Part shown: one piece after another, positions 824 to 41,030 of the stretch
How the letters are laid out: each line of letters opens with the position of its first letter
Position numbering within the stretch: position 1 is the first letter of the stretch
From: Haliotis rufescens
Lineage: Eukaryota
NCBI RefSeq assembly: GCF_023055435.1
Contig: NW_025963779.1
Coordinates: 84,444,001-84,508,000 of the forward strand
Reading direction: 5' to 3'
Length of the DNA stretch: 64,000 nt
Notes under the pieces: model-generated
Seen by the model: the letters and a program-made list of their open reading frames with translations, nothing else
Told to the model about the DNA's origin: nothing
Databases searched by the model: none
Translations under genes and position numbers: made by a program

Positions 824-1257
824 ACACCAAACTCTGTCCACCACGAGAATTAGGAAATTCAATATATCTAACGTTGATCTGTGTAACTGCCATTTTGCAA
901 TTAGACTTAAAGGGTAGGACATTAATTACTTAAGATTGGTTTACCGTCTTCACTTTATGTGTTTATTTAGTAAAACACATAGTTTACTGACATATGATCA
1001 TTTCCTGATAAAATAGTTGAAAGGTGAATCTCAGGTGAAACAGACTATAGCTTTTAATTCACCGTAATGTTTTTTAAATCTCCCTCTTGTCTTCCTCTTG
1101 ATTTTTCGTTCACTTGAAATTCAGCAACTCTTCTCTTTCCCTTCTCTCCAGTAAAACACGCTCAGCAACCATGGTGTCAGCGGTTCTTGGCTTGCTGTCA
1201 GGAGTTATGGTAAAGTGGGTTGTACTTCGCTTCCAAAAGATTATTGCACTCATTGCA

Positions 1258-2265: not shown

Positions 2266-2699
2266 TGTTCCTTATATTATCATGACATCAGTCACTGGTT
2301 TGCCTGGCCTAGATTCGATTATTTACAGACCCCGTCATATTGTCAGAATATTACTAAGTTTGGCATATGCGTCCTGACTGTAATTGGTTCGTGTCGCAAT
2401 GAAGGAAACGCTTTCATTGTACATGGGTTGGCATTGTCGGACTTAATATACGGGAATGTCTTGAGAATTCCCATTGCAGCAGAATGTATCAGAACAGCAG
2501 GAGCCGTGTTGCTTGAACCAGACTCGACCTCGATAGTCCCACATGTTGACATCTCCTTCATGTAGCCTACCTGCCATGATCTCGCCATTGACGTATGAAA
2601 TAATACCGAAAATGGAGGTTGTCATTATTGACAGTGTAGGCCCCATTTCGATGTCTGTACATTTATACCGACCTGACTGTGGCGGCACCGACGTTTCCG

Positions 2700-3205
2700 A
2701 CTCTATGTGTGTACTAGATAATATAACTGTTTCACTGTCTTTCCGACTCTATGGGTGTACTAGATAATATGACTGTTTCACTGTCTTTCAGACTCTATGT
2801 GTGTACTAGATAATATGACTGTTTCACTGTCTTTCAGACTCTATGTGTGTACTAGATAATATGACTGTTTCACTGTCTTTCAGACTCTATGTGTGTACTA
2901 GATAATATGACTGTTTCACTGTCTTTCAGACTATATGTGTGTACTAGATAATATGACTGTTTCACTGTCTTTCAGACTATATGTGTGTACTAGATAATAT
3001 GACTGTTTCACTGTCTTTCCGACTCTATGGGTGTACTAGATAATATGACTGTTTAACTGTCTTTCAGACTCTATGTGTGTACTAGATAATATGACTGTTT
3101 CACTGTCTTTCAGACTCTATATGTGTACTAGATAGTATGACTGTTTAACTGTCTTTCCGACTCTATGTGTGTACTAGATAATATGACTGTTTCACTGTCT
3201 TTCAG
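2700..3205 (+). repeat. 46-bp splice-acceptor minisatellite, 11 units (A1 intron 1)
   Basis: Unit ACTCTATGTGTGTACTAGATAATATGACTGTTTCACTGTCTTTCAG; the last unit supplies the exon 2 acceptor. Confidence 0.97.
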
Positions 3206-3908
3206 ACGCGGTCCTATGTCAGAATAACTTCAACGATGAGTGGAAGTACGCGGCCCCTGGCTCGGGATGCAAGAGGTTCATCAATTGCTATGGTCAGGAT
3301 TACCATGGAATGCTTCAGTGTCCCGAGACGACTCTCTTCAATGAAAACACCCAGAGGTGTGAATACCTACTAGATTTCAACTGTCAGGTAGCCCTCAACC
3401 AAACCCCAGGTAACGAAACATACATGATGCATATGATATTAATTATTTCGTAGCAATAGTGAAATATCGTTGTCATCTCAGACGAGAACATTAATATAAT
3501 CTGATTGATTGTTTTGTGTATTCAACTAAGCATTGCCTAGCAACTGGTTATCATTTACAGTTCAGATTGACAATGTACACCCGTTTTGTGAACAGAAAGA
3601 ATTCTGAGACGTAACTTTCTTTATTCCCCGAATGCACAAGATGCTTCACGGGACCGTGACTGTCTTTTCAAATGGCTTGCTACGTTGGCAGGTTGAATAA
3701 TCTTTTAAGTCATATAGTCTATATCAGCTATTTCAGTAACTAGTATTTATAAACTTAGTAGAACCCAGTTTCCGCTAATAACCGTTGAATGCTTGAAGAT
3801 GATCAACAGCGGACACGGGGTACGTTCCCGAAGCAAGAGAGTAAACTGACTTCGAAGATCCAATTTTCTTCTTGCCGAACTAGGCTGGAATTATGGAGTT
3901 ATATCTTG

Positions 3909-4074: not shown

Positions 4075-5989
4075 GAGTTATATCTTGGCTGGCCAAACGA
4101 GTCTATTCACAGTCCAATCAAAATCGCGTGAGGAATTTGACATCCGGTTCGTTAACTGCCTGGCAGATTTCGGTCGATTGCAGGGTTTGTAAAGCGTGTG
4201 TGCCGTCAAATCGGCGTCAACGGATATTTTGCAAATCCTTTCATGTTTCTAATCAAGGTGTTTATGTGATCTTATGCACTTCGTGAAGTATGACCCATTT
4301 TTTTACAATATAGATCTTGATTATCGATTGTCTTGACTTCGCGCAGCAACTTTGTTTGCAGCAAGTGCAAGTGATATGAGAAGTGGAATCTGATTGGTCA
4401 AAAGGAGGAACATAGAAGGGAAATAACTCATAATAGCCACTGGTGGCGCAACGATTGAGCCCAGAAATTCCAGCATAGTTTGGCAATGGTGGAAACTGGG
4501 CTTTTACAGTCAACTGACTCTTGCCTCGGGAAGATGGTCACTGGTTTGCCATGAATCCGAAACCCGACCGGAAATACTGTGGCTTTTCCACGGTCCATAA
4601 CAATACACTAAAGGAGGAACCCTCACTCCAACCCTCACTTACCCTAAAGGATAAATGTCAACAGGAAGGGACGATCGTGAATCGAGAATGGAATCGATAT
4701 CTTGCTATTTTCTTTTTGATATTATCAATCAAGAAATAGCTCTTGAGCATATAGTATATATTGTTAAAGATGCCAGTCTAGTGGTGATGTTGACAGGATT
4801 TCCTTCAGGCGGTTTGTTACTACGTGACTTGAGCAAAATTTCACAAATACGATATAAACTTAAGATTTTGGAATGTTATGCCTCCCGTTAAGCCTGATTA
4901 CTAATGTCAGTAGCCTTTAACTTATCAATAATAATATCAAAATATGACATTTTATTATATTTTCTTTCTCTATTTAATGAAATTACATAAGTAAGATTGA
5001 TATTATTTCTATTAATCTCGACTACTGTGAGAAAAAGAACTAACTGATATTGCTTTAGGGACATAGGCGTGTGATTCGAAGATGGTTACAGTTCTAAGGT
5101 GATTTCTGTTGAACGCTGTATTGTACGTATGTGTTTGCTTCCAGACTGTGTGACCGGCGTGGATTCCTACAATTGCTCAGCCTTCACATACTGCTATCTT
5201 AACACCCAGTACAACTTCAGCTGCAACCAAGACCTCTACTACTCTCAGAGCAAACTCACCTGTGTGTACGCTGAAGATCTGACAGAGGATGACAAACTCA
5301 GATGCAACTTCCGCAACGGACAATAGGATTCAGCATAAACTATGTATTCTCTGAACTTCAAATAAAGCCAGTCAGACAATTATAACTTTGTGATGCATAT
5401 ATTTTCAAACGACGAGCGAGACAATAGTTCATCTGCTGTCAAGTGAGTGGGGGTCGGCATGGCGTGTTAATGCTGCATCTGCCTGCTGCATCACGGCGGC
5501 CTAAATAACGACTTTAGTTCTGAGAAGGTCGTTAAGTGTGGTGGTCCCAGCCACCTCGGAGGAATGACACACCTAATAAGTGAGACCTCTGGCGGGGAAC
5601 GACTTCAAAATTCAAAAACACTTCCTTTTTATGCAAATTGTGTGANNNNNNNNNNNNNNNNNNNNNNNNNNNNNNNNNNNNNNNNNNNNNNNNNNNNNNN
5701 NNNNNNNNNNNNNNNNNNNNNNNNNNNNNNNNNNNNNNNNNNNNNNNNNNNNNNNNNNNNNNNNNNNNNNNNNNNNNNNNNNNNNNNNNNNNNNNNACAA
5801 CTGGTGTCATCTCTGATTTTCAGTGGTTCATTCATATAATGCTCACCACTATTTTTCCTTTTCCTTTTAATGCAGACTGGTTATTCTCTGGCGTTGAGTA
5901 TTCCCGTCCTCGTGCTATGCCCTCCCAATCCTATCTCCATAGAATAGCCTTTGTCGGGCCTACGGTACCGTTACTATCTATATTCTTCC

Positions 5990-6660
5990 CTCCTCGTTAT
6001 GAATGCTGTTGATAACGGTTGTCGGGTATAAGGCCATGTACGTTCCTCGTTATGAATGCTGTTGATGAAGGTTGTCGGGTATAAGACCATGTACGTTCCT
6101 AGCTGTGAATGTTGTTGATAAGAGTTGCCGGGTATAAGACCATGTACGTTCCTCGTTAAGAATGTTGTTGATAAGGGTTGTTGTGTACAAGACCATGTAC
6201 TTTCCTCGTTATGAATGCTGTTGATGAAGGTTGTCGGGTATAAGACCATGTACGTTCCTCGTAATGAATGCTATTGATGAAGGTTGTTGGGTATAAGACC
6301 ATGTACGTTCATCATTGTGAATGCTGTGATGAAGGTTGTCGGGTATAAGACCATATACGTTCCTCGTTATGGATGTTGTTGATGAAGGTTGTCGGGTATA
6401 AGATCATAAACGTTCCTCGTTATGAATGCTATTGATGAAGGCTGTCGGGTATAAGACCATGTACGTTCCTCGTTATGAATGCTATTGATGAAGGTTGTTG
6501 GGTATAAGACCATGTACGTTCATCATTGTGAATGCTATTGATGAAGATTGTCGGCTATAAGACAATGCACGTTCCTCGTTGTGAATGCTGTTGATACAGA
6601 TTGTCGAGCATGACACCGAGACCATGATCGTTTCTCGTTATCATTGCTGTTGACAAGGGT
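5990..6660. repeat. 53-bp minisatellite (~12 units) downstream of A1
   Basis: Unit GTTCCTCGTTATGAATGCTGTTGATGAAGGTTGTCGGGTATAAGACCATGTAC. Confidence 0.95.
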
Positions 6661-7514: not shown

Positions 7515-7699
7515 TCATTGACAAAAGCTTAGGCGGAATACTTGGAATTGTACAATAGACACAGCTTTTTTAGTAGATATTTGTGATGATGATGGCAAAA
7601 AAATTTTGCCGCTTTTATTTGATCCGGATTTACTTCTGAATCATCCTTACCTATCCCAGTATGACATGATTACGTTTTTTTTCTACCACATAGCATACT

Positions 7700-7898
7700 T
7701 ATTACGGGAGAGTCAGAGGGGAAACCACCGAAGCACATGACATACTCATTACAGGAGAGTCAGAGGGGAAACCAGCGCAGCACATGACATACTCATTACG
7801 GGAGAGTCAGAGGGGAAACCAGCGCAGCACATGACATGCTCATTACGGGAGAGTCAGAGGGGAAACCAGCGCAGCACAAAACATGCTCATTACGGGAA
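7700..7898. repeat. 47-bp tandem repeat, ~4 units (also 17278-17475; 2 units at 36196-36270)
   Basis: Unit CATTACGGGAGAGTCAGAGGGGAAACCAGCGCAGCACATGACATACT. Confidence 0.9.
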
Positions 7899-8375
7899 AG
7901 TAAATCGTCCATGTCTCGCCCTTTGGTACGTCATGTAAAGAAAAAGAAGGATTGTAGGCATATACGTTTTAACATCCGTGGATTTGCAAAGGCCTTCACG
8001 TGACAAACATAACATTTAAAGAAAATGCCTCTTCATTTCTACCATTGATACAGTTAATTACAATAAGCATCCCGATTTGTTTTTATCTGGCTGTGCAAAC
8101 TGTGCGCTGTAATTACTTTAAAACCATCCGGTAGACTAAACCGTCTTCATAAAGAGGAGAATCAACACTGACTAGACACTTGGGTAATCAGACCGCCCTT
8201 TATTATGTTTTCGCCAATGGATGCGAGCGTAACGGGGGCCGTTACACAGGAATTTGAAAAATAGCAACAAAAAACTTGCAAATGGTATGTGTTGCCGCCA
8301 AATGGGGAACTAAGTTAGTGTATTGCTTGAGCCCGATTTGAACAATGCCAAGAATTAAGGCAGGGAGCTGACACA

Positions 8376-9730: not shown

Positions 9731-9811
9731 TCGATGGGTCGATTTTTCGTTCACTCGAAATTCAGCAACTCTTACCTTTCCCTTCTTTCCAGTAAAACAC
9801 GCTCAGCAACC

Positions 9812-12800
9812 ATGGCGTCAGCGGTTCTTGGCTTGCTGTTGGGATGCCTGGCAATGTCCAGTGCACAAGTGCCAGAAGAACAGTGTAAGTAGAATTGTAT
9901 TGAACTTGTCAGGAGTTATGGTAAAGTGGGTTGTACTTCGCTTCCAAAAGATTATTGCACTCATTGCATGTGTGTGTGTGCGTGCGTGCTTGCTTGCTTN
10001 NNNNNNNNNNNNNNNNNNNNNNNNNNNNNNNNNNNNNNNNNNNNNNNNNNNNNNNNNNNNNNNNNNNNNNNNNNNNNNNNNNNNNNNNNNNNNNNNNNNN
10101 NNNNNNNNNNNNNNNNNNNNNNNNNNNNNNNNNNNNNNNNNNACGACCAATCCTTGTTTTATACCTTTACTGCCGAGCGTTAGACAGGGTCACACTAAGT
10201 ACCATTTTTTGTATGCCCGACTGTCCACCGACCACCCGCTCTAAGGCAAAAACCTCTGTCCACTCAACATTTTGGCATAAGCGGTTGTTGTGTTGGAAGG
10301 GAAGATTTGTCGAAGGTGGACCTATCACGGCAACATTCACTACTCAGAGCGCTGGGTATACACAGTGGGGTACTTGTGAGTCAGTGTGCTTCTGTTCAGC
10401 ACGAAGAGCACTATCATCTGTTTCGACACAGTTTGTAAGAAAATACGTGAGTATATTTGGACAATAAAGGCAGTCGCAGCGCTAACACCACGAGGTGAAA
10501 CAAGGCCCACAATACATCCGCAGCTAGAGATAAGCGAGGGCACATTCGCTTAGGTGTATACTCCTTGTGTCGAACCCGCTTGTGTCGTGCACCGTGGGAA
10601 TTCCGGGTAAGAATAGGTCCATATCAACCTATGCTTTTCGGACAAGGCGACTAAATGAATAGGGTGGTCGGACTCTGTGCATGGGTTGTTAGTGAGTTGA
10701 CGGCGCGGATCGTTGTTTGATCAAGGGTTTAACATCCAAGGCCTCAGTAGGACATTATCAAATTTGACGCATCCGTGACAAAAATGATGTCACATACATT
10801 CCTTCTTTTGATTTGTACCATATGTTTCCGTTTTCCAGGTGAACAATTGACTTACCTTTGCATGTGTTTGTGACGGGTGCCACCGGTGGGGCAGGATACG
10901 CTCATCTTTTCGTGAACATCTGGCATCATGACTATTTGGTAGTGATTCATAATCACTTGCTCATGATATAGTCGGAATCGTACAATCGACTCTGGTAGAT
11001 TTGTTATGAATATGGAAAGGGATTTGTTGCTTATATTATCATGACATCAATTACTGGTTTGTCTGGCCTAGATTCGATTATTTACAGGCCCCGTCATATT
11101 GTCAGAATTTTGCTAAGTTTGGCATATGCGTCCTGACTGTAATTGGTTCGTGTCGCAATGAAGGAAACGCTTTCATTGTACATGGGTTGGCATTGTCGGA
11201 CTTAATATACGGGAATGTCTTGAGAATTCCCATTGCAGCAGAAGATATCAGAACAGCAGGAGCCGTGTTGCTGGAACCAGACTCGACCTCGATAGTCCCA
11301 CATGTTGACATCTCCTTCATGTAGCCTACGTACCATGATCTCGCCATTGACGTATCAAATAATACCGAAAATGGAGCTTGTCATTATTGACAGTGTAGGA
11401 CCCATTTCGATGTCTGTACATTTATACCGACCTGACTGTGGCGGCACCGACGTTTCCGACTCTATGTGTGTACTAGATAATATGACTGTTTCACTGTCTT
11501 TCCGACTCTATGTGTGTACTAGATAATATAACTGTTTCACTGTCTTTCCGACTCTATGTGTGTACTAGATAATATGACTGTTTCACTGTCTTTCCGACTC
11601 TATGTGTGTACTAGATAATATGACTGTTTCACTGTCTTTCAGACTCTATGTGTGTACTAGATAATATGACTGTTTCACTGTCTTTCAGACTCTATGTGTG
11701 TACTAGATAATATGACTGTTTCACTGTCTTTCAGACTCTATGTGTGTACTAGATAATATAACTGTTTCACTGTCTTTCCGACTCTATGTGAGTACTAGAT
11801 AATATGACTGTTGCACTGTCTTTCAGACTATATGTGTGTACTAGATAATATGACTGTTTCACTGTCTTTCAGACTCTATGTGTGTACTAGATAATATGAC
11901 TGTTTAACTGTCTTTCAGACTCTATGTGTGTACTAGATAATATGACTGTTTAACTGTCTTTCAGACTCTATGTGTGTACTAGATAATATGACTGTTTAAC
12001 TGTCTTTCAGACTCTATGTGTGTACTAAATAATATGACTGTTTCACTGTCTTTCAGACTCTATGTGTGTACTAGATAATATAACTGTTTCACTGTCTTTC
12101 AGACTCTATGTGTGTACTAGATAATATGACTGTTTAACTGTCTTTCAGACTCTATGTGTGTACTAGATAATATGACTGTTTAACTGTCTTTCCGACTCTA
12201 TGTGTGTACTAGATAATATGACTGTTTCACTGTCTTTCAGACTCTATGTGTGTACTAGATAATATAACTGTTTCACTGTCTTTCAGACTCTATGTGTGTA
12301 CTAGATAATATGACTGTTTCACTGTCTTTCAGACTCTATGTGTGTACTAGATAATATGACTGTTTCACTGTCTTTCAGACTCTATGTGTGTACTAGATAA
12401 TATAACTGTTTCACTGTCTTTCAGACTCTATGTGTGTACTAGATAATATGACTGTTTAACTGTCTTTCAGACTCTATGTGTGTACTAGATAATATAACTG
12501 TTTCACTGTCTTTCAGACTCTATGTGTGTACTAGATAATATGAATGTTTCACTGTCTTTCAGACTCTATGTGTGTACTAGATAATATGAATGTTTCACTG
12601 TCTTTCCGACTCTATGTGTGTACTAGATAATATGACTGTTTCACTGTCTTTCCGACTCTATGTGTGTACTAGATAATATAAATGTTTCACTGTCTTTCAG
12701 ACGCGGTCCTATGTCAGAATAACTTCAACGATGAGTGGAAGTACGCGGCCCCTGGCTCGGGATGCAAGAGGATCATCAATTGTTATGGTCAGGATTACCA

Positions 12801-14833
12801 TGGAATGCTTCAGTGTCCCGAGACGACTCTCTTCAATGAAAACACCCAGAGGTGTGAATACCCATTAGATTTCAACTGTCAGGTAGCCCTCAACGAAAAC
12901 CCAGGTAACGAAACATAAATGATGCATATGATATTATTTATTTCGTAGCAATAGTGAAATAGCGTTGTCATCTCAGACGAGAACATTAATATAATCTGAT
13001 TGATTTTTTTATGTTTTCAACTAAGCATTGCCTAGCAACTGGTTATCATTTACAGTTCAGATTGACAATGTACACCCGTTTTGTGAACAGAAAGAATTCT
13101 GAGACGTAACTTTCTTTATTCCCGGAATGCACAAGATGCTTCACGGGACCGTGACTGTCTTTTCAAATGGCTTGCTACGTGCAACGTTGGCAGGTTGAAT
13201 AATCTTTTAAGTCATATAGTCTATATCAGTTATTTCAGTAACTAGTATTTATAAACTTAGTAGAACCCAGTTGCCGCTAATAACCGTTGAATGCTTTAAG
13301 ATGATCAACAGCGGACACGGGGTACGTTCCCGAAGCAAGAGAGTCAACTGACTTTGAAAGTCCAATTTTCCTCTTGCCGAACTAGGCTGGAATTATGGAG
13401 TTATATCTTGAGTGAGTGAGTGAGTATGGTTTAACGCCGCTTTTAGCAATATCCCAGTAATATCACGGCGGGGGGCACCAGAAATGGGCTTCACACATTG
13501 TACCCATGTCGGCAATCGAACCCGGGTCTTCGGCGTGACGAGCAAACGCTTTAACCACAAGGCTACCCGACCGCCCGAGTTATATCTTGGCTGGCCAAAC
13601 GAGTCTATTCACAGTCCAATCAAAATCGTGTGAGGAATTTGACATCCGGTTCGTTAACTGCCTGGCAGATTTCGGTCGATTGCAGGGTTTGTAAAGCATG
13701 TGTGTCGTCAAATCGGCGTCAACGGATATTTTGCAAATCCTTTCATGTTTCTAATCAAGGTGTTCATGTGATCTGATGCACTTCGAGAAGTAAGACCCAT
13801 TTTTTTACAATATAGATCTTGATTATCGATTGTCTTGACTTCGCGCAGCAACTTTGTTTGAAGCAAGTGCAAGTGATATGAGAAGTGGAATCTGATTGGT
13901 CAAAAGGAGGAACATAGAAGGGAAATAACTCATAATAGCCACTGGTGGCGCAACGATTGAGCCCAGAAATTCCAGCATAGTTTGACAAGGGTGGAAACTG
14001 GGCTTTTACAGTCAACTGACTCTTGCCTCGGGAAGATGGTCACTGGTTGGCCATGAATCCGAAACCCGACCGGAAATACTGTGGCTTTTCCACGGTCCAT
14101 AACAATACACTAAAGGAGGAACCCTCACTCCAACCCTCACTCAACCTAAATAATAAATGTCAACAGGAAGGGACGATCGTGAATCGAGAAAGGAATCGAT
14201 ATCTTGCTATTTTCTTTTTGATATTATCAATCAAGAAATAGCTCTTGAGCATAAAGTATATATTGTTAAGATGCCAGTCTAGTGGTGATGTTGCCAGGAT
14301 TTCCTTCAGGCGGTTTGTTACTAGGTGACTTAAGCAAAATTTCACAAATACGAAATAAACTTAAGGTTTTCGAATGTTATGCCTCCCGTTAAGCCTGATA
14401 ACTAATGTCAGTAGCCTTTAACTTATCAATAATAATATCAAAATATGACATTTTATTATATTTTCTTTCTCTATTTAATGAAATCACATAAGTAGGATTG
14501 ATATTATTTCTATTAATCTCGACTACTGTGAGAAAAAGAACTAACTGATCTTGCTTCAGGGACATAGGCGTGTGATTCGAAGATGGTTACAGTTCTTATG
14601 TGCACGTGATTTCTGTTAAACGCTGTATTGTACGTATGTGTTTGCTTCCAGACTGTGTGACCGGCGTGGCTCCCAACAATTGCTCAGCCTTCACATACTG
14701 CTATCTTAACACCCAGTACAACTTCAGCTGCAACCAAGACCTCTACTACTCTCAGAGCAAACTCACCTGTGTGTACGCCGAGGATCTGACAGAGGATGAC
14801 AAACTCAGATGCAACTTCCGCAACGGACAATAG
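9812..14833 (+). CDS. Secreted chitin-binding type-2 (peritrophin-A/CBM14) double-domain protein, copy A2; join(9812..9884,12701..12904,14652..14833), 152 aa
   Basis: Signal peptide MASAVLGLLLGCLAMSSA. GT-AG phase-1 introns give a continuous frame. Domain 1 is C-X16-C-X5-C-X10-C-X12-C-X7-C and domain 2 is C-X8-C-X5-C-X9-C-X12-C-X13-C, with aromatics in the X5 and X12 loops. TATA-like box at 9722; AATAAA ~35 nt after the stop. Confidence 0.88.
11459..12700 (+). repeat. 46-bp splice-acceptor minisatellite, 27 units (A2 intron 1)
   Basis: 1242 bp = 27 x 46. Confidence 0.97.
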
Positions 14834-15164
14834 GATTCAGCATAAACAATGTATTCTCTGAACTTCAAATAAAACCAGTCAAATTATTTTAATTTTGTGA
14901 TGCATATATTTTCAAACGACGAGCGAGACAATAGTTCATCTGCTGTCAAGTGAGTGGGGGTCGGCATGGCGTGTTAATGCTGCATCTGCCTGCTGCATCA
15001 CGGCGGCCTAAATGACGACTTTAGTTCTGAGAAGGTCGTTAAGTGTATGGTCCCAGTCACCTCGGAGGAATGACACACCTAATACGTGAGACCTCTGGCG
15101 GGGAACGACTTCAAAATTCAAAAACACTTCCTTTTTATGCAAATTGTGTGAGTGCTAGCAGCTA

Positions 15165-15466: not shown

Positions 15467-16295
15467 TCCTCGTTATCAATGCTGTTGATAACGGTTGTCG
15501 GGTATAAGACCATGTACGTTCCTCGTTATGAATGCTGTTGATCAAGGTTGTCGGGTATAAGGCCATGTACGTTCCTAGCTGTGAATGCTGTTGATAAGGG
15601 TTGTTGTGTACAAGACCATGTACGTTCCTCGTTAAGAATGTTGTTGATAAGGGTTGTTGTGTACAAGACCATGTACTTTCCTCGTTATGAATGCTGTTGA
15701 TGAAGGTTTTCGGGTATAAGACCATGTACGTTCCTCGTTATGACTGCTGTTGATGAAGGTTGTTGGGTACAAGACCATGTACGTTCCTCGTGATGAATGC
15801 TATTGATGAAGGTTGTCGGGTATAAGACCATGTACGTTCCTCGTTAAGAATGTTGTTGATAAGGGTTGTTGTGTACAAGACCATGTACGTTCCTCGTTAT
15901 GAATGCTGTTGATGAAGGTTGTCGGGTATAAGACCATGTACGTTCCTCGTTATGAATGCTGTTGATGAAGGTTGTTGGGTATAAGACCATGTACGTTCCT
16001 CGTTATGAATGCTATTGATGAAGGTTGTCGGGTATAAGACCATGTACGTTCATCATTGTGAATGCTGTGATGAAGGTTGTCGGGTATAAGACCATATACG
16101 TTCCTCGTTATGGATGTTGTTGATGAAGGTTGTCGGGTATAAGATCATAAACGTTCCTCGTTATGAATGCTATTCATGAAGGTTGTCGGGTATAAGACCA
16201 TGTTCGTTGCTCGTTGTGAATGCTGTTGATACAGATTGTCGAGCATGACACCGAGACCATAGTCGTTTCTCGTTATCATTGCTGTTGACAAGGGT
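15467..16295. repeat. 53-bp minisatellite (~15 units) downstream of A2
   Basis: Same unit. Confidence 0.95.
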
Positions 16296-17475
16296 TAACT
16301 AATACGCCATCCTCCCCCTATATAATCTTGTAATCCTTATCCGATAATAGCTCTTCACAGCCAATCTCTTGTTGACTCCATACGAAAAATATCCACACAT
16401 AAATACCAAGTTCCGTACTGCAGACACCCAGATGCTCTTGCCTGTGTCATGAAGTTGCTGTAATATGTCATACTAGTGAGTCAGGTATCTATGTCCATCC
16501 ATGCTGAAGAACTTCAATGTTTGACACCTCGTATCTGACTAGAAATATACTAGAGTATAAGGGCAAAGTTCACAAGGCATGGCCTTATTTGAAGCGCATT
16601 TACAAGTCCTAAATGTCGCATAAAGAACAAAGTGAGAACTTGCTTCAGTGGATTCCTAATACCTGAGTCCCCATCCTTTCGATCCAAATAATAAAATATG
16701 TGCGCTTTTACAGTCACATCGTGGCCGTAGTACATGATTTATAATTGTTCTTGAATAATTTGTAAATTGGCCAAATTGTTTCAGATGGTTGTAGAGCTAG
16801 TTATTTGCTAGCCATAGACCACATTAACCTTGAAGAGGCACTCCTAAATACTTATAATATGTAACAACCTTTAAGGCAGTATTACTGTATGTCCATGTTT
16901 CATGTTTAGTTATCATGTCCCCATTCTGAATACATCGATACAGTATCATCACTATTTGACAGCGATTCATTGACACATGGACCGCCTCCGTGGTCTAGTG
17001 GTAGAGCGTCCGCCCGGAAAGCGGAAGGTCCGGGGTTCGATCTCGGGCCGCGTCATACCAAAAGACGTTAAAATATGGTACAAGCAGACACATACACACA
17101 CGTGCATGCACGTCGCTATATGAGTGCAATAATCTTGGACGCGACGTTAAACCCAATTTCACCTCATTGACAAAAGCTTTTTTGCCGCTTTTATTTGATC
17201 CGGATTTACTTCTGAATCATCCTTACCTATCCCAGTATGACATGATAACGGTTGTTTTCTACCACATAGCAAATAATCATTACAGGAGAGTCAGAGGGGA
17301 AACCAGCAAAGCACATGACATACTCATTACAGGAGAGTCAGAGGGAAACCAGCGCAGCACATAACATGCTCATTACGGGAGAGTCAGAGGGGGAACCAGC
17401 GAAGCACATGACATACTCATTACAGGAGAGTCAGAGGGAAACCAGCGCAGCACATAATATTCTCATTACGGGAAA

Positions 17476-20265: not shown

Positions 20266-20353
20266 ATGTTGTCAGCGGTTCTTGGCTTGCTGTTGGGATG
20301 CCTGGCAATGTCCAGTGCACAAGTGCCAAAAGAAGAGTGTAAGTAGAAGTAGA

Positions 20354-20436
<83 letters not shown>

Positions 20437-22030
20437 CCTCTGTCCACTCAACATTTTAGCATAAGCGGTTGTTGTGATGTAAGGGAAGATTTGTCGAAGG
20501 TGGACCTATCACGGCAACATTCACTCAGAGGGCTGGGTATACACACAGGGGTTCACCTATGATCTTCCTGTGGGTCAGTGTGCTTCTGTTCAGCACGAAG
20601 AGCACTATCATCTGTTTCGACACAGTTTGTAAGAAAATACGTGAGTATATTTGGACAATAAGGGCAGTCGGAGCGCTAACACCACGAGGTGAAATAAGGC
20701 CCACAATACATCCGCAGCTAGAGATAAGCGAGGGCACATTCGCTTAGGTGTATACCCCTTTTGTCGAACCCGCTTGTGTCGAACCCGCTTGGGAATTCCG
20801 GGTAAGAATAGGTCCATATCAACCTATGCTTTTCGGACAAGGCGACTAAATGAGTAGGGTGGTCGGACTCTGTGCATGGCTTGATAGTGAGTTGACGGCG
20901 CGGATCGTTGTTCGATCAAGGGTTTAACATCCAAGGCCTCAGTAGGACATTATCAAATTTGACGCATCCGTGACAAAAATGATGTCACATACATTCCCTC
21001 TTTTGACTTGTACCATATGTTCCTGTTTTCCAGGTGAACAATTGACTTACCTTTGCATGTGTTTGTGACGGGTGCCACCGGTGGGGCAGGATACGCTCAT
21101 CTTTTCGTGAACATCTGGCATCATGACTATTTGGTAGTGATTCATAATCACTTGCTCATGATACATTCGGAATCGTACAATCGACTCTGGTAGATTTGTT
21201 ATGAATATGGAAAGGGATTTGTTGCTTATATTATCATGACATCAGTTACTGGTTTGTCTGGCCTAGATTCGATTATTTACAGGCCCCGTCATATTGTCAG
21301 AATATTACTAAGTTTGGCATATGCGTCCTGACTGTAATTGGTTCGTGTCGCAATGAAGGAAACGCTTTCATTGTACATGGGTTGGCATTGTCGGACTAAA
21401 TATACGGGAATATCTTGAGAATTCCCATTGCAGCAGAAGGTATCAGAACAGCAGGAGCCGTGTTGCTGGAACCAGACTCGACCTCGATAGTCCCACATGT
21501 TGACATCTCCTTCATGTAGCCTACCTGCCATGATCTCGCCATTGACGTATGAAATGATAGAGGTTGTCATTATTGACAATGCAGGGCCCATTTCGATGTC
21601 TGTATATTTATACCGACCTGACTGTGGCGGCACCGACGTTTCAGACTCTATGTGTGTACTAGATAATATAACTGTTTCACTGTCTTTCAGACTCTATGTG
21701 TGTACTAGATAATATAACTGTTTCACTGTCTTTCAGACTCTATGTGTGTACCAGATAATATAACTGTTTCACTGTCTTTCAGACTCTGTGTGTACTAGAT
21801 AATATGAATGTTTCACTGTCTTTCAGACGCGGTCCTATGTCTGAATAACTTCAACGATGAGTGGAAGTACGTGGCCCCTGGCTCGGGATGCAAGAGGTTC
21901 ATCAATTGCTATGGTCAGGATTACCATGGAATGCTTCAGTGTCCCGAGACGACTCTCTTCAATGAAAACACCCAGGCGTGTGAATACCTACTAGATTTCA
22001 ACTGTCAGGTAGCCCTCAACGAAAACCCAG
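20266..22030 (+). CDS. CBM14 gene copy A3, exons 1-2 only: join(20266..20338,21827..22030); own exon 3 deleted, may splice into A4 exons
   Basis: Intact promoter, signal peptide MLSAVLGLLLGCLAMSSAQVPKEE and open exon 2 with six Cys. Intron 2 is cut at ~23570, where it joins the 5' UTR of A4. Confidence 0.75.
21645..21826 (+). repeat. 46-bp splice-acceptor minisatellite, 4 units (A3)
   Basis: Same unit; the last has a 2-bp deletion. Confidence 0.95.
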
Positions 22031-23618
22031 GTAACGAAACATAAATGATGCATATGATATTAATTATTTCGTAGCAATAGTGAAATAGCGTTGTCATCTC
22101 AGACGAGAACATTAATATAATCTGATTGATTGTTTTGTGTATTCAACTAAGCATTGCCTAGCAACTGGTTATCATTTACAGTTCAGATTGACAATGTACT
22201 TCCGTTTTGTGAACAGAAAGAATTCTGAGACATGACTTTCTTTATTCCCCGAATGCACAAGATGCTTCACGGGACCGTGACTGTCTTTTCAAATGGCTGA
22301 TTATGTGCAACGTTGGCTGGTTGAATAATCTTTTAAGTCATATAGTCTATATCAGTTATTTCAGTTACTAGTATTTATTAACTTAGTTTAACCCAGTTGC
22401 CGCTGATAACCGTTGAATGCTTGAAGATGATCAACAGCGGACACGGGGTACGTTCCCGAAGCAAGAGAGTCAACTGACTTTGAAAGTCCAATTTTCTTCT
22501 TGCCGAGCTAGGCTGGAATTATGGAGTTATATGAGTGAGTGAGTATGGTTTTACGCCGCTTTTAGCAATATCCCAGTAATATCACGGCGGGGGGCACCAG
22601 AAATAGGCTTCACACATTGTACCCATGTCGGGAATCGAACCCGGTTCTTCGGCGTGACGAGCAAACGCTTTAACCACAAGGCTACCCGACCGCCCGAGTT
22701 ATATCTTGGCTGGCCAAACGAGTCTATTCACAGTCCAATCAAAATCGCGTGAGGAATTTGACATCCGGTTCGTTAACTGCCGGGCAGATTTCGGTCGATT
22801 GCAGGATTTGTAAAGCATGTGTGCCGTCAAATCGGCGTCAACAGATATTTTGCAAATCCTTTCATATTTCTAATCAAGGTGTTTATGTGATCTGATGTAC
22901 TTCGCGAAGTAAGACCCATTTTTTTACAATATAGATCTTGATTATCGATCGGATTGTCTTGACTTGGCGCAGCAACTTTGTTTGAAGCAAGTGCAAGTGA
23001 TATGAGAAGTGGAATCTGATTGGTCAAAAGGAGGAACGTAGAAGGGAAATAACTCATAATAGCCACTGGTGGCGCAACGATTGAGCCCAGAAATTCCAGC
23101 ATAGTTCGACAAGAGTGAAAACTGGGCTTTTACAGTCAGTTGACTCTCTTGCCTCGGGAAGATGGTCACTGGTTGGCCATGAATCCGAAACCCGACCGGA
23201 AATACTGTGTCTTTTCCACGTTCCATAACAATATACTAAAGGAGGAACCCTCACTCACCCAGTAGCTCATCCACCCCTCACTCACCCTGAAGGGTAAATG
23301 TCAACATTTTATATATTATCCATCAAGAAATACCTATGGAGCATATAGAATATATTGTTAAGATGCCAGTCAAGTGGTGATGTTGACAGGATTTCCTTCA
23401 GGCGGTTTGTTACTGCGTGACTTAAGCAAAATTTCACAAATACGATATAAACTTAAGATTTTCGAATGTTATGCCTCCCGTTAAGCCTGATAACTAATGT
23501 CAGTAGCCTTTAACTTATCAATAATAATATCAAAATATGACATTTTATTATATTTTCTTTCTCTATTTACATAGACTCTTCCCCTTCCCTTCTCTCCAGT
23601 AATTCACGCTCAGCAACC

Positions 23619-23661
23619 ATGGTGTCTAGTGCACAAGTGCAAGATGAAAATTGTAAGTAGA

Positions 23662-23711
<50 letters not shown>

Positions 23712-26126
23712 ACGACTGACTCAGAGCTCTGATAGAGGTTGTCATTATTGACAGTGTAGGACCCATTTCGATGTCTGTACATTTATACCGACCTGACTGT
23801 GGCGGCACCGACGTTTCAGACTCTATGTGTGTACTAGATACTATGACTGTTTCACTGTCTTTCAGACTCTATGTGTGTACTAGATAATATGACTGTTTAA
23901 CTGTCTTTCAGACTCTATGTGTGTACTAGATAATATGACTGTTTCACTGTCTTTCAGGCTCTATGTGTGTACTAGATAATATAACTGTTTCACTGTCTTT
24001 CAGACTCTATGTGTGTACTAGATAATATAACTGTTTCACTGTCTTTCAGACTCTATGTGTGTACTAGATAATATGAATGTTTCACTGTCTTTCAGACTCT
24101 ATGTGTGTACTAGATAATATAACTGTTTCACTGTCTTTCAGACGCGGTCCTATGTCTGAATAACTTCAACGATGAGTGGAAGTACGCGGCCCCTGGCTCG
24201 GGATGCAAGAGGTTCATCAATTGTTATGGTCAGGATTACCATGGAATGCTTCCGTGTCCCGAGACGACTCTCTTCAATGAAAACACCCAGAGGTGTGAAT
24301 ACCCAATATATTTCAACTGTCAGGAACCCTTCAACGAAAACCCAGGTAACGAAACATAAATGATGCATATGATATTAATTATTTCGTAGCAATAAGGAAA
24401 TAGCGTTGTCATCTCAAACGAGAACATTAATATAATCTAATTGGTTGTTTTATGTATTCAACTAAGCATTGCCTAGCAACTGGTTATCATTTACAGTTCA
24501 GATTGACAATTGTTTTGTGAACAGAAAGAATTCTGAGACGCGACTTTTTTTATTCACCGAATGCACAAGATGCTTCACGGGACCGTGACTGTCTTTTTAA
24601 ATGGCTGGTTATGTGCAACGTTGGCAGGTTGAATAATCTTTTAAGTCATATAGTCTATATCAGTTATTTCAGTTACTAGTATTTATCAACTTAGTTGAAC
24701 CCAGTTTCCGCTAATAACCGTTGAATGCTTGAAGATGATCAACAGCGGACATGGGGTATGTTCAGCGCATTACTGTTCATCTTCCCGAGGCAAGGGAGTC
24801 AACTAACTTTGAAAGTCCAATTTCCACTCTTGCCGAACTAGGCTGGAATTATGGAGTTATATCTTGGCTGGCCAAACGAGTCTATTCACAGTCCAATCAA
24901 AATCGCGTGAGGAATTTGACATCCGGTTCGTTAACTGCCGGGCAGATTTCGGTCGATTGCAGGATTTGTAAAGCATGTGTGCCGTCAAATCGGCGTCAAC
25001 AGATATTTTGCAAATCCTTCCATATTTCTAATGAAGGTGTTCATGTGATCTGATGTACTTCGCGAAGCAAGACCCGTCTTTACAATATAGATCTTGATTA
25101 TCGATCGGATTGTCTTGACTTGGCGCAGCAACTTTGTTTGAAGCAAGTGCTAGTGATATGAGAAGTGGAATCTGATTGGTCAAAAGGAGGAACGTAGAAG
25201 GGAAATAACTCATAATAGCCACTGGTGGCGCAACGATTGAGCCCAGAAATTCCAGCATAGTTCGACAAGAGTGGAAACTGGGCTTTTACAGTCAGCTGAC
25301 TCTTGCCTCGGGAAGATGGTCACTGGTTGGCCATGAATCCGAAACCCGACCGGAAATACTGTGGCTTCTCAACGGTCCATAACAATACACTAAATAGCTC
25401 ATCCAACCCTCACTCACTCAGTAGCTCATCCACCCCTCACTCACCCTAAAGGATAAATGTCAACAGGAAGGGACGATCGTGAATCGAGAATGGAATCGAT
25501 ATGTTGCTATTTTCCTTTTTATATTATCCATTAAGAAATACTTATAGAGCATATAGTATATATTGTTAAGATGCCAGTTTGGTGGTGATGTTGCCAGGAT
25601 TTCCTTCAGGCGGTTTGTTACTAGGTGACTTGAGCAAAATTTCACAAATACGGAATAAACTTAAGATTTTCGAATGTTATGCCTCCCGTTAAGCCTGATA
25701 ACTAATGTCAGTAGCCTTTAACTTATCAATAATAATATCAAAATATGACATTTTATTATATTTTCTTTCTCTATTTAATGAAATCACATAAGGAAGATTG
25801 ATATTATTTCTATTAATCTCGACCACTGTGAGAAAAAGACAAATTGATATTACTTCAGGGACATAGGCGTGTGATTCGAAGATGGTTACGGTTCTAAGGT
25901 GATTTCTGTTGAACGCTGTATTGTACGTATGTGTTTGCTTCCAGACTGTGTGACCGGCGTGGATTCCTACAATTGCTCAGCCTTCACATACTGCCATCTT
26001 AACACCCAGTACAACTTCTGCTGCAACCAAGACCTCTACTACTCTCAGAGCAAACTCACCTGTGTGTACGCCGAGGATTTGACAGAATATGACAAACTCA
26101 GATGCAACTTCCGCAACGGACAATAG
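23619..26126 (+). CDS. CBM14 gene copy A4: join(23619..23652,24142..24345,25945..26126); signal peptide core deleted, no own promoter (pseudogene or 3' half of an A3-A4 fusion)
   Basis: Exon 1 reads MVSSAQVQDEN, a 39-nt in-frame deletion versus A2/A3/A5. Exons 2 and 3 are open with canonical splice sites. AATAAA at 26161. Confidence 0.7.
23820..24141 (+). repeat. 46-bp splice-acceptor minisatellite, 7 units (A4)
   Basis: 322 bp = 7 x 46. Confidence 0.95.
24778..25318. mobile_element. MITE with ~70-bp TIRs (CATCTTCCCGAGGCAAG...CTTGCCTCGGGAAGATG) in A4 intron 2; homologs at ~3826-4536, ~13328-14038, ~22453-23164
   Basis: Long inverted termini; absent from A5 intron 2; an independent copy lies in B2 intron 1. 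Confidence 0.85.
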
Positions 26127-37015: not shown

Positions 37016-40000
37016 ATGGTGTCAGCGGTTCTTGGCTTGCTGTTGGGATGTCTGGCAATGTCCAGTGCACAAGTGCCAGAAGAAGATTGTAAGTAGAATT
37101 GTATTGAACTTGTCAGGAGGTAAAGTGGGTTGTACTTCGCTTCNNNNNNNNNNNNNNNNNNNNNNNNNNNNNNNNNNNNNNNNNNNNNNNNNNNNNNNNN
37201 NNNNNNNNNNNNNNNNNNNNNNNNNNNNNNNNNNNNNNNNNNNNNNNNNNNNNNNNNNNNNNNNNNNNNNNNNNNNNNNNNNNNNNNNNNNNNNNNCCTT
37301 TTAACGTATTTTGGTTTGCTCGACCGTGGATCGAACCACCGACCACCCGTTCTCAGGGAGACGCTCTGTCCACTAAGCGTTTCAGTATGAGCGGTTGTTG
37401 TGATGGAAGATTTGTCGAAAGGTGGAACTGTCACGTCAATATTCACTTATGGCACTAAAAATACACAGTGGGTTATAGGGGGCACTGGTGGCCCAGGCGT
37501 CTAAGGCGCCGCAATTCGCTGTGAAGAGTTACGTCCCTTGGGCACGCCAGAAACCTATGATTGTGGGTTCGAATGTTTCTAGGTTTGTCAGCACCATACC
37601 CGTGCTCGTGGGTTTCACCGAAGTGGTAAACGTCTGAGACCTGCATCACTTCGGGCTTTCCTCCCACATTAAGCTGACATGCCGCGATATGACTGGAATT
37701 CTCAATTCTGGAATTGACTCAAACAATTTCTGAGCAAGGGTCTTATTAGACTCTTTGAAATCTTGGTGGGAAGAGCATGCTCGACTGTGCCTCAAACGTT
37801 TTGAAATGTAGACACAAAAGGCTTGAGCTGCTGGAATATTTCCCGACATAAACTATATCTTTAGCTCAAACGTCTTGGGACAAGTACCCCATGGATCAAG
37901 GAATACAGTTTGTCATGTGGCAAAGCGGTGTTTTCAAATGTTTTGACAGAATTAAACTTTTCTGAATAAAATGTCATTATTTGAGGTTTGAGAATCCAAT
38001 TCCACTACCCAGATATCTTCTGTGAGTATTAACCTAGTCCTTCCTTGATTGTATTAAGGATTATGGTTAATCTTGGAAACATGGCTTCCAGCAGTTGACC
38101 CTAACTCGATCCCTACAGTAGCAGACTTCAGATGTAGTACTGCTCTTCTCCACTTAGACACCTGGTAATTAACAATGGTGAAGACGAAGAACTGCAGACA
38201 ATGGGCCTCTTTAGTTTATGTACTCGTTTTGAGATAATTTTACTTATACGGGTAATACTGTTGAAAAAAACCAGCAAAACTCATCATCTGTTACCCTACA
38301 GTAGTGTAAGAAAATACGTGAGTATATTTTGACAATAACGCCACGCGGTGGAACAAGACACAATTCAACGGCAGAGAACACACCTTGTGTTCCTCCCTTA
38401 TGTGAGAGCACAGTCGTAGAGCTACACATCGTTCACGCCGTGGGGATTCCGGGTAAGAATAGGTCCACAGCCACCCATGTTCTTCCTACAAGGCGACTAA
38501 ATGAATAAGGTGACTTGGTGCCATGGTTGATAGTGAGTTGACGGCACGGAGGGTTGTTCATAATATCAATCACTTGTTTGCCTGGCCCGGATTCCATTAT
38601 TTACAGTTCCCCGTCATATGGTTGGAATATGCTAATATCGCAAGGAAGCATAGGTATTACATGGGTTGACTTTACCCGACGTATGTACGCGAATGTCTTG
38701 AGAATTCCCTTTACAACAGAAGGTATCAGAACAGCAGGGACCGTGTTGTTTGAACCAGAGTCGACCTCGGTAGTCCCACATGTTGACATCTCCTTCATGT
38801 AGCCTACCTGCCATGATCTCGCCATTGACGTATGAAATAATACCGAAAATGGAGGTTGTCATTATTGACAGTGTAGGACCCATTTCGATGTCTGTACATT
38901 TATACCGACCTGACTGTGGCGGCACCGACGTTTCCGACTCTATGTGTGTACTAGATAGTATGACTGTTTCACTGTCTTTCAGACTCTATGTGTGTACTAG
39001 ATAATATGACTGTTTCACTGTCTTTCAGACTCTATGTGTGTACTAGATAATATAACTGTTTCACTGTCTTTCAGACTCTATGTGTGTACTAGATAATATA
39101 ACTGTTTCACTGTCTTTCAGACTCTATGTGTGTACTAGATAATATGACTGTTTCACTGTCTTTCAGACTCTATGTGTGTACTAGATAATATAACTGTTTC
39201 ACTGTCTTTCAGACTCTATGTGTGTACTAGATAATATAACTGTTTCACTGTCTTTCCGACTCTATGTGTGTACTAGATAATATGACTGTTTCACTGTCTT
39301 TCAGACTCTATGTGTGTACTAGATAATATGACTGTTTCACTGTCTTTCAGACTCTATGTGTGTACTAGATAATATGACTGTTTAACTGTCTTTCAGACTC
39401 TATGTGTGTACTAGATAATATGACTGTTTCACTGTCTTTCAGACTCTATGTGTGTACTAGATAATATAACTGTTTCACTGTCTTTCAGACTCTATGTGTG
39501 TACTAGATAATATGACTGTTTAACTGTCTTTCAGACTCTATGTGTGTACTAGATAATATGACTGTTTCACTGTCTTTCAGACTCTATGTGTGTACTAGAT
39601 AATATGACTGTTTAACTGTCTTTCAGACTCTATGTGTGTACTAGATAATATGACTGTTTCACTGTCTTTCAGACGCGGTCCTATGTCAGGATAACTACAA
39701 CGGTGACTGGAAGTACGTGGCCCCTGGCTCGGGATGCAAGAGGTTCATCAATTGTGGTGGCCAGGATTACCACGGAACGCTCCAGTGCCCCGAGACGACT
39801 CTCTTCAATGAAAACACCCAGGATTGTGTATACGCAGCGGATTCCAACTGTCAGGAACCCTTCAACGAAAACCCAGGTAACGAAACATAAGTTTGCGTAT
39901 TATATTAATTATCTTGTAGCACATGCTAAATAGAGTTGTCATTAATAGAATCTGATTAATTGTTTTATGTATTCAATTAGTGAGTGAGTGAGTGAGTATG

Positions 40001-41030
40001 GTTTTACGCCGCTTTTAGCAGTATTCCAGCAATTTCACGGCGGGGGACACCAGAAATGGGCTTCACACATTGTATACATGTCTGGAATCGAACCCGGGCG
40101 AACGCTTTAACCACTGAGCTACCCGACCGCGTCTGTATTCAATTAACCATTGCCTAGCAACTGGTTATTATTTACAATTCAGATTGGCAATGTACATCCG
40201 TTTTGTGAAAAAAGGAATTCGGAGATGTGACTTAATTCCCCGAATGGACAGGAAGTGTTAAGGGACCATGACTGTCTTTTCAAATGGCTGGTTATGTAAA
40301 AAGTTGGCGGATGAATAGACTTTTACTTCATGTATTCTATTCAGTTATTTCAGTCATTAATAAACTAGTATGAACATATAATATTTTCGCTAATGACCGT
40401 TGAATGAACTACAGCGGACACGGAATACGTTTACAAAACGAAGTAGCTCATCCACCCCTCACTCAACCGAAAGGATAAATTTTAACAGGTTGGGACGATC
40501 GTGAATCGAGAATGGAATCAATATGTTGCCATTTTTTAATGATATTTTACATGAATAAAGACATATCCGTTGAGAAACAGTGACGGTAGAAGATATTGTT
40601 AGGATGCCAATATGACTTCCTTCAGTTTTAATGTTACTTAGTGTAAGGACTAATTTCAGTAACCTTTAACTTAACAAAACCACATTTTATAATATGTGTT
40701 TTCTATTTAACGAAATAACCTGCTAAATTGATAGTATTAGAAGGATTCTGACTACGGTGAAAAGGTCTTATGTTTATAGATAAAGGGACCTACAGTCGAT
40801 ATGGTTACAATTCTGTGATTTCTGTTGAACGCTGTATTGTACGTATGTGTTTGCTTCCAGACTGTGTGACCGGCGTGGATCCCTACAATTGCTCAGCTTT
40901 CACCTACTGCCATCTTAACACCCAGTACAACTTCAGCTGCAACCAAGACCTCTACTACTCTCAGAGCAAACTCATCTGTGTGTACGCTGAAGATCTGACG
41001 GAGGACGACAAATACCTGTGCGGCTTCTAG
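37016..41030 (+). CDS. Secreted CBM14 double-domain protein, copy A5; join(37016..37088,39673..39876,40861..41030), 148 aa
   Basis: MVSAVLGLLLGCLAMSSAQVPEED / AVLCQDNYNGDWKYVAPGSGCKRFINCGGQDYHGTLQCPETTLFNENTQDCVYAADSNCQEPFNENP / DCVTGVDPYNC...DDKYLCGF*. Canonical splice sites, 12 Cys retained, TATA-like box at 36929, AATAAA ~41090. Confidence 0.88.
37478..37700 (+). mobile_element. tRNA-derived SINE with V-SINE-like core (GGGCTTTCCTCCCACA); other copies ~49900-50102 and ~57000-57213
   Basis: Three dispersed copies share the core and the GATAT..CTGGAA...GCGGCGTTAAA tail. Confidence 0.65.
38937..39672 (+). repeat. 46-bp splice-acceptor minisatellite, 16 units (A5)
   Basis: 736 bp = 16 x 46. 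Confidence 0.97.
39980..40133 (-). mobile_element. tRNA-derived SINE in A5 intron 2
   Basis: Same family; TSD TGTATTCAATTA; empty site in A1-A4. Confidence 0.85.

What the first reader, a model, noticed from the sequence alone, without database searches (positions are those of the whole stretch)
11459..12700. A minisatellite built from the splice acceptor itself: 4-27 tandem 3' splice sites before exon 2 of every A gene
Seen: the 46-bp unit ends in TGTTTCACTGTCTTTCAG|AC, essentially identical to the true acceptor including the first two exonic bases, and carries branch-point-like TGAC/TAAC words. Unit counts are 11 (A1), 27 (A2), 4 (A3), 7 (A4) and 16 (A5). Some units have the AG changed to CG (TTTCCG). 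Because 46 = 3n+1, using the acceptor one unit upstream frameshifts exon 2 (…TTC AGA CGC GGT CCT ATG TCA GAA TAA), and any farther one hits TAA in the repeat. Only the last AG therefore makes protein. Inference: array length and AG/CG content could tune the productive versus NMD-bound mRNA ratio per paralog. Alternatively, exon definition alone picks the last site, or splicing proceeds stepwise.
Basis: partly seen in the sequence, partly recalled or inferred. Interest (0 to 1): 0.85.

Follow-up and report, generated by a model that had tools for sequence, protein, structure and literature searches.

The report
Splice-acceptor "mirage" minisatellite in abalone genes
In six neighbouring red abalone genes for small secreted chitin-binding proteins, the end of the first intron, splice acceptor included, is repeated head to tail 1 to 27 times; this is a known kind of repeat ("mirage" minisatellite), and nothing yet shows that the spare acceptors are used.

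Summary
Five 46-bp arrays (11, 27, 4, 7 and 16 units) each end exactly at TTTCAG|AC, the acceptor of a CBM14 exon. Every upstream AG gives a stop within 5-21 codons, and only the last AG keeps the frame.

The window is Haliotis rufescens. All exon translations are exact substrings of RefSeq proteins, and every model uses the last AG.

Three corrections:
- A sixth paralog, 5 kb upstream of the window, has a single unit flanked by the 8-bp direct repeat TTTC(C/A)GAC.
- CG is the left-edge variant rather than clearly a mutated AG.
- In A2 the two units next to the true acceptor are CG, so its nearest spare AG lies 138 nt upstream.

The structure fits the "mirage" minisatellites of amphioxus (repeats spanning an intron-exon boundary). 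It mirrors the human F7 IVS7 donor VNTR, where only the exon-adjacent site is used. This scan had already noted four more such arrays in the same genome, and I checked one.

Stepwise splicing is unlikely, since no 5' splice site is regenerated. My verdict is a new member of a known kind, most likely a tolerated by-product. The 1-27 copy series across paralogs is a useful natural test bed.

The parts
2694..3207 (+). A1 array: 11 units of 46 bp plus the 8-nt partial unit TTTCAGAC. There are 7 spare AG sites and 4 CG units.
3206..3409 (+). A1 exon 2 (CBM14 domain). The gene's normal exon 1 (about 1171-1198) lacks its donor after a deletion of about 70 bp. RefSeq LOC124136962 uses another first exon near 1834.
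9812..9884 (+). A2 exon 1 coding part: signal peptide, ending in phase 1 (...CAGT|gtaagt).
   Evidence: exact match to residues 1-24 of P0094
9885..12700 (+). A2 intron 1. It contains a masked N run at 10000-10142, which I left unfilled.
11453..12702 (+). A2 array, the finding itself: 27 units plus a partial unit. There are 19 spare AG sites and 8 CG units (units 1-4, 8, 17, 26, 27).
12701..12904 (+). A2 exon 2, phase 1-1, first CBM14 (peritrophin-A) domain.
   Evidence: PF01607, 26 bits against a cut-off of 22.1
14652..14833 (+). A2 exon 3 coding part (second CBM14 domain, stop TAG at 14831-14833). AATAAA lies at 14868-14873.
20266..20338 (+). A3 exon 1 coding part. This is the first exon of the fused A3+A4 gene, RefSeq LOC125372154, 246 aa.
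21639..21828 (+). A3 array: 4 units (unit 4 lacks 1 base), all AG.
21827..22030 (+). A3 exon 2 (CBM14).
23575..23652 (+). Internal exon of the fused gene, made from the remnant of A4's 5' UTR and exon 1.
   Evidence: residues SSPSLL...QDEN of P0095
23814..24143 (+). A4 array: 7 units, all AG.
24142..24345 (+). A4 exon 2 (CBM14), the second copy in the fused gene.
25945..26126 (+). A4 exon 3 coding part.
37016..37088 (+). A5 exon 1 coding part. Its intron 1 holds a masked N run at 37144-37296, left unfilled.
38931..39674 (+). A5 array: 16 units, 14 spare AG sites and 2 CG units.
39673..39876 (+). A5 exon 2 (CBM14), 88% identical to A2 exon 2.
40861..41030 (+). A5 exon 3 coding part (shorter C-terminus, ...YLCGF*).

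Best explanation
What it is. These are 'mirage'-type minisatellites, meaning tandem amplifications of a segment that straddles an intron-exon boundary. The host genes are six tandemly duplicated red abalone (Haliotis rufescens) genes. Each encodes a secreted protein of about 150 aa with two CBM14 chitin-binding domains.

How it arose (inferred). The amplified segment is the last 44 nt of intron 1 plus the first 2 nt of exon 2. In its one-unit state (paralog A0) it is bracketed by an 8-bp direct repeat, TTTCCGAC ... TTTCAGAC. Slippage or unequal exchange in that register makes and resizes the array. Runs of identical variant units inside the arrays are the trace of this process.

Why it is tolerated (inferred). 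Only 2 exon bases are copied, so every expansion adds material that stays intronic as long as the exon-adjacent AG is used. Copy number can therefore drift, here from 1 to 27 among paralogs.

Which site is used. Productive mRNA uses the last AG. The annotated proteins show this, but no reads were examined here. By local sequence the upstream copies are competent acceptors, and using one gives a premature stop. I infer that they are mostly ignored, because only the last copy is followed by the real exon and by its donor 204 nt away (exon definition). On this view the arrays are a tolerated by-product of a minisatellite-rich genome rather than a regulatory device.
For: - Arrays and register.
- Gene model and CBM14 domains.
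- Species and splice junctions: exon translations are exact substrings of H. rufescens RefSeq proteins P0094, P0095, P0096, P0098 and P0099. The junction residue is Y (T|AC) or D (G|AC) at all seven array-preceded acceptors.
- The same Y junction is seen in proteins of H. asinina, H. rubra and H. cracherodii.
- A0 has one unit between the 8-bp direct repeats.
- The unit was found nowhere else in the 1.33-Gb assembly. This is a lower-bound search.
- 15% of the window is minisatellite, in 17 arrays of 150 bp or more.
- A second acceptor-spanning array lies on the same chromosome, 59 bp x 16, abutting the exon it copies. The scan notes list three more.
- All paralogs keep open frames and their cysteines. 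dN/dS is about 0.4-0.7 whatever the array length.
- Precedents: amphioxus mirages leave regular splicing intact (PMC3087553). The repeated identical donors of F7 IVS7 are silent (PMC1557585).
Against: - No RNA reads could be examined, so use of the last AG rests on annotation. The annotation pipeline may have chosen that junction only because it keeps the frame.
- From -44 to +2 the spare sites are identical to the true one, so no local feature favours the last.
- The spare sites are transcribed first, which could favour them kinetically.
- Early experiments with duplicated acceptors gave conflicting outcomes, as summarised in PMC1557585.
- The paralogs are young (dS 0.03-0.2), so intact frames say little about present expression.
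Confidence: 0.68

Rival explanations
1. Decoy-acceptor rheostat. A real fraction of transcripts splice exon 1 to one of the spare AGs and are destroyed by NMD. Unit number and AG/CG content would then set a different productive output for each paralog.
For: - Spare sites equal the true site from -44 to +2 and have their own branch-point word.
- All of them give early stops.
- There are 19 such sites in A2.
- In A0, A1 and A2 the copy or copies next to the true acceptor are CG.
Against: - There are no RNA data.
- RefSeq lists one protein per gene, with no isoform labels.
- Amphioxus mirages and the F7 VNTR do not disturb splicing.
- CG is the old left-edge variant and is absent from A3 and A4.
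- A CG unit still keeps its tract and branch point and a UAG 18 nt further on, so it need not disarm the module.
- Similar arrays occur in unrelated genes of this genome, which points to a mutational process.
Confidence: 0.14
2. Positive landing pad. The many pyrimidine tracts and branch points, and the UGUGUGU and UCUU words in each unit, gather splicing factors (U2AF, PTB-like or CELF/TDP-43-like proteins). These would change the efficiency of intron 1 removal or of exon 2 inclusion without the spare AGs being used.
For: Each unit carries the words CTGTCTTTC, ACTCTA and TGTGTGT. Repeat-length effects on splicing are documented in general, for example in the human spl-TR catalogue PMC10078293 (listed, not read).
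Against: This rests purely on motifs, with no binding or expression data. The array RNA is not structured (z +2.3). The 27-fold length range among near-identical paralogs argues against a tuned element.
Confidence: 0.08
3. Transcription-level or chromatin effect. The intronic VNTR would act as an enhancer, a silencer or a polymerase pause site, independent of splicing.
For: None specific. The only support is the general precedent of intronic VNTRs associated with expression (PMC8096271, listed, not read).
Against: No evidence was found here, and the unit boundary coincides with the splice site rather than with any known binding motif.
Confidence: 0.05
4. Assembly artefact. The array lengths would be mis-assembled, or collapsed and expanded copies of one another.
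For: Repeats are error-prone in assemblies. An amphioxus mirage was mis-assembled in a draft genome (PMC3087553).
Against: - Each array has its own order of variant units and unique flanks.
- The arrays sit in paralogs that differ by 3-12%.
- The assembly is chromosome-scale, with a 94-Mb contig.
Confidence: 0.03

Closest known systems
Amphioxus 'mirage' minisatellites (Adh3, Cañestro et al. 2002, as cited in PMC3087553; globin genes BflGb6 and BflGb9, PMC3087553)
   Same: - Both are head-to-tail repeats whose unit spans an intron-exon boundary, so the splice signal is repeated many times.
- Unit sizes are comparable (10-160 bp there, 46 bp here).
- Copy number is unstable.
- Edge units differ from inner ones.
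- Regular splicing is reported there and annotated here.
   Different: - The phylum differs (mollusc).
- The unit takes only 2 exon bases, so the array is wholly intronic and codes for nothing.
- The same array sits in six paralogs with 1 to 27 units.
- The one-unit state with its 8-bp direct repeat is still present.
Human F7 intron 7 37-bp VNTR (PMC1557585)
   Same: It is a minisatellite whose edge unit spans the exon-intron junction, giving 5-9 identical splice sites in a row. Only the exon-adjacent one is used, and the others are functional but silent.
   Different: The F7 sites are donors, whereas these are acceptors. The proposed 5'-to-3' scanning would not by itself favour the last acceptor. 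F7 was tested with 50 constructs, and nothing has been tested here.
Human IFI6 (6-16) 12-nt minisatellite with multiple splice donor sites (Turri et al. 1995; known to me from memory, title phrase seen in reference lists)
   Same: It is a minisatellite at an exon boundary that repeats a splice site.
   Different: Again the sites are donors. The 12-nt unit keeps the frame, and more than one site is used, giving in-frame protein variants. Here 46 = 3n+1 and every spare site ends in a stop.
Decoy 3' acceptor sites and AS-NMD (for example the caspase-2 In100 element; U2AF2 decoy sites, bioRxiv 10.1101/175901, listed; my own knowledge)
   Same: This is what the rheostat reading would work like: intronic acceptor-like sites that engage U2AF/U2 unproductively or give transcripts with early stops.
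   Different: Those are single evolved elements with shown function. Here there is a variable repeat with no functional data.
NAGNAG tandem acceptors (my own knowledge)
   Same: They are tandem duplication of the acceptor AG.
   Different: They sit 3 nt apart, share one branch point and tract, keep the frame, and both AGs are often used. Here each copy is a full module 46 nt apart and out of frame.

Membership tests
Mirage minisatellite (tandem repeat spanning an exon-intron boundary) | Head-to-tail array of a minisatellite-sized unit | tested here: met
   46-bp unit, 4-27 copies, 95-97% matches.
Mirage minisatellite (tandem repeat spanning an exon-intron boundary) | The unit includes the boundary, so the splice signal is repeated | tested here: met
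   Each unit ends in ...CTGTCTTTCAG|AC, and the array ends 2 nt inside exon 2. The exon share is minimal (2 nt), against tens of nt in amphioxus.
Mirage minisatellite (tandem repeat spanning an exon-intron boundary) | Copy-number instability | tested here: inconclusive
   Paralogs carry 1, 11, 27, 4, 7 and 16 units. Allelic or somatic variation could not be tested without reads.
Mirage minisatellite (tandem repeat spanning an exon-intron boundary) | Regular splicing retained | tested here: inconclusive
   RefSeq protein models of all six genes use the last AG, but no RNA reads were seen.
CBM14 / peritrophin-A chitin-binding proteins (the host genes) | Pfam PF01607 match above the gathering score, with the six-cysteine pattern | tested here: met
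   Exon 2 scores 26 bits and exon 3 scores 30.4 bits, against a cut-off of 22.1. The cysteines are kept in all paralogs.
AS-NMD (unproductive splicing used for regulation) | The alternative site introduces a premature stop upstream of a later exon junction | tested here: met
   All 51 spare AGs in the window give a stop within 5-21 codons, upstream of the exon 2/3 junction.
AS-NMD (unproductive splicing used for regulation) | The alternative site is actually used and the product is NMD-sensitive | not testable with these tools
Recursive (stepwise) splice site | The acceptor is directly followed by a donor (AG|GU), so a 5' splice site is regenerated | tested here: not met
   Units read CAG|ACTCTA. 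The junction with exon 1 (...CAGT) gives no usable GU.

The most novel reading that the evidence does not exclude
The arrays are copy-number-dependent decoy acceptors. The more AG-bearing units a paralog (or allele) carries, the more of its transcripts are spliced to a spare site and lost to NMD. On this reading a fast-mutating VNTR sets the output of each member of a young gene family, and the CG units next to the true acceptor in A0, A1 and A2 would be selected buffers.
Probability: 0.12. Interest if true: 0.7.

Novelty: new member of a known kind. Interest (0 to 1): 0.33.

Why it matters
How the spliceosome chooses among identical 3' splice sites is still unsettled, and early duplication experiments disagreed (PMC1557585 discussion). 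This locus offers a natural series in one genome: near-identical genes with 1, 4, 7, 11, 16 and 27 copies of the same full acceptor module, every spare copy being out of frame.

One RNA data set, with and without NMD block, could show which rule picks the site: position, exon definition or order of transcription. It could also show whether intronic VNTR length changes gene output.

The finding also extends mirage minisatellites from cephalochordates to a mollusc, where they seem to recur. As it stands, it is a tolerated repeat of a described kind.

Tried and rejected
- Related DNA. The look-up of encoding contigs for the H. asinina homologue was closed, so no orthologous intron from another abalone could be read.
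- Joined model. Exons were compared one by one with database proteins, and frames after each AG were read without joining.
- Masked stretches. The N runs were left unfilled.
- RNA structure as a mask for spare sites. Three units plus the exon start fold worse than shuffles (z +2.27), so I rejected this.
- Older decayed unit in the left flank. The local alignment score of 24 was reached by 229 of 2000 shuffles, which is not significant, so I dropped it.
- CG units as buffers. I first thought that CG units funnel upstream branch points to the true AG. I withdrew this because each unit has another AG (CTAG) that a scan from the branch point would meet first.
- Transposon origin. The unit is found only in this gene cluster (a lower bound).
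- Selection test. The dN/dS comparison rests on too few changes to separate functional from recently silenced copies.

Full report
**What is there**

Tandem Repeats Finder reports five arrays of one 46-bp unit:

| Array | Window position | Copies |
|---|---|---|
| A1 | 2694-3207 | 11.2 |
| A2 | 11453-12702 | 27.2 |
| A3 | 21639-21828 | 4.2 |
| A4 | 23814-24143 | 7.2 |
| A5 | 38931-39674 | 16.2 |

All have 95-97% matches. Printed in register, every array starts after the same unique flank (...GGCACCGACG). Each ends with the 8-nt partial unit TTTCAGAC, after which the same exon begins. So the unit is the last 44 nt of the intron plus the first 2 nt of the exon.

**The genes**

Gene A2 has three exons:
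- Exon 1 is at 9812-9884. It encodes a signal peptide and ends in phase 1 at CAGT|gtaagt.
- Exon 2 is at 12701-12904.
- Exon 3 is at 14652-14833. It ends with the stop TAG, and AATAAA follows at 14868.

Exons 2 and 3 each match Pfam CBM_14 (peritrophin-A) above the gathering score.

A full HMMER scan with exon 2 found a 155-aa Haliotis asinina protein. Searching with that protein found Haliotis rufescens RefSeq proteins. Exon by exon, my translations are exact substrings of those proteins:

| Paralog | Protein | RefSeq locus |
|---|---|---|
| A2 | P0094 | LOC124136982 |
| A5 | P0099 | not recorded |
| A3+A4 (fused) | P0095, 246 aa | LOC125372154 |
| A1 | P0098 | LOC124136962 |
| A0 | P0096 | LOC124136979 |

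The window is therefore red abalone, on a 94.2-Mb chromosome. At all seven array-preceded acceptors the residue across the junction is Y (T|AC) or D (G|AC), so the annotation uses the last AG. The same Y junction appears in proteins of H. asinina, H. rubra and H. cracherodii.

**The frame argument**

I read from each AG in the frame imposed by a phase-1 exon 1. All 51 spare AGs in the window meet a stop after 5-21 codons, and only the last AG is open to the exon's end.

One correction is needed. In A2, units 26 and 27 are CG, so its nearest spare AG is 138 nt upstream.

**A sixth copy and the likely origin**

Searching the whole assembly with three units and with exon 2 found matches only in this cluster. 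It also found one more paralog, A0, 5 kb upstream of the window. A0 has exactly one unit, TTTCCGAC - 38 nt - TTTCAGAC, followed by exon 2.

The array period is thus the distance between two copies of an 8-bp direct repeat, one of which happens to contain the acceptor. Slippage or unequal exchange in that register would create and resize the array. This step is inferred.

The left copy reads CG in A0 and in the first unit of A1, A2 and A5. CG therefore looks like the old edge variant that spread inward, not a decayed AG. Runs of identical variants inside arrays are typical minisatellite turnover. In A2, for example, units 1-4 share C5, units 10-12 share A40, and units 24-25 share A34. A0 could instead be a collapsed array, and I cannot tell which is the case.

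**Context**

Seventeen minisatellites of 150 bp or more cover 15% of the window. The scan's earlier notes list four other acceptor- or donor-spanning arrays in this genome.

I fetched two of those places:
- One holds a 59-bp x 16 array whose unit carries ...GTGTTTCAG|AATGAGCTGAC. It ends on the exon it copies.
- The other holds a 34-bp x 118 array, which I did not dissect.

The phenomenon is therefore recurrent here, which favours a mutational origin over a gene-specific device.

**What is known**

Repeats spanning intron-exon boundaries were named 'mirages' in amphioxus. They occur in Adh3 and in the globin genes, including one that repeats the 3' end of an intron plus the exon start. RT-PCR there showed regular splicing although many units carry AG/GT (PMC3087553).

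The mirror case is the human F7 intron 7 VNTR. Its identical repeated donors are functional but silent, and only the exon-adjacent one is used (PMC1557585). The same paper recalls that early tests with duplicated acceptors gave opposite results. The outcome for acceptors therefore cannot be assumed.

**Function**

The indirect evidence is as follows:
- All paralogs keep open frames and all cysteines. dN/dS is about 0.4-0.7 regardless of array length. The copies are young and the counts small, so this is weak.
- The array RNA is not structured.
- Stepwise splicing is unlikely, because no GU follows the AG.

My best reading (0.68) is a tolerated mirage VNTR with the last AG chosen through exon definition. 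The decoy/NMD rheostat remains possible (about 0.12-0.14).

**Verdict**

This is a new member of a known kind. Its main value is as a natural 1-27 copy series for testing 3' splice site choice.

Noticed in passing
window 1120-1200 (A1 exon 1), against 9761-9910 (A2): A1 has lost about 70 bp covering the end of exon 1 and its donor. RefSeq LOC124136962 (P0098, 132 aa) starts instead at a 4-codon exon near 1834 and has no signal peptide. A1 may be a dying copy.
   Followed up: partly
window 20266-26126: A deletion joined A3 (exons 1-2) to A4. RefSeq annotates one 246-aa protein (P0095) with three CBM14 exons and an internal exon at 23575-23652 made from A4's old 5' UTR and exon 1. This transcript would have to cross two acceptor arrays (4 and 7 units).
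   Followed up: partly
window 38681-39876 against 11203-12904: A5 and A2 are 93% identical in the 250 bp before the array but only 88% in exon 2, and about 64% in the 250 bp after exon 2. This suggests gene conversion around the array or fast change of the domain. dN/dS for the pair is 0.49.
   Followed up: partly
window 5991-6606, 15467-16241, 26777-27869; also 7687-7901, 17273-17473: Each gene unit carries two more minisatellites downstream of exon 3, with periods of 53 bp and about 47 bp. Their copy numbers also differ (11.6, 14.6 and 20.6; 4.6 and 4.3). A0 has only about 3 units of the 53-bp repeat.
   Followed up: no
L040 435-1383 (G000:C1:22506934-22507882): Another acceptor-spanning array lies here: 59 bp x 16, each unit holding about 20 nt of intron end plus about 39 nt of exon start, ending on the real exon (...NELSYVSKAHRLLELL...). 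Many units read CAA instead of CAG.
   Followed up: partly
window 41000-64000: The second half of the window holds long arrays with periods of 40, 42, 23/46, 24/46 and 44 bp (for example 44266-45435, 56140-56594, 61354-62035). These may be coding repeats of mucin-like genes. I did not examine them.
   Followed up: no
window 10000-10142, 37144-37296, 5646-5796, 26450-26595, 53893-54094: These are masked N runs. In A1 the place matching A2's N run is a (GTGC)n microsatellite (1259-1368). The N runs were left unfilled.
   Followed up: no
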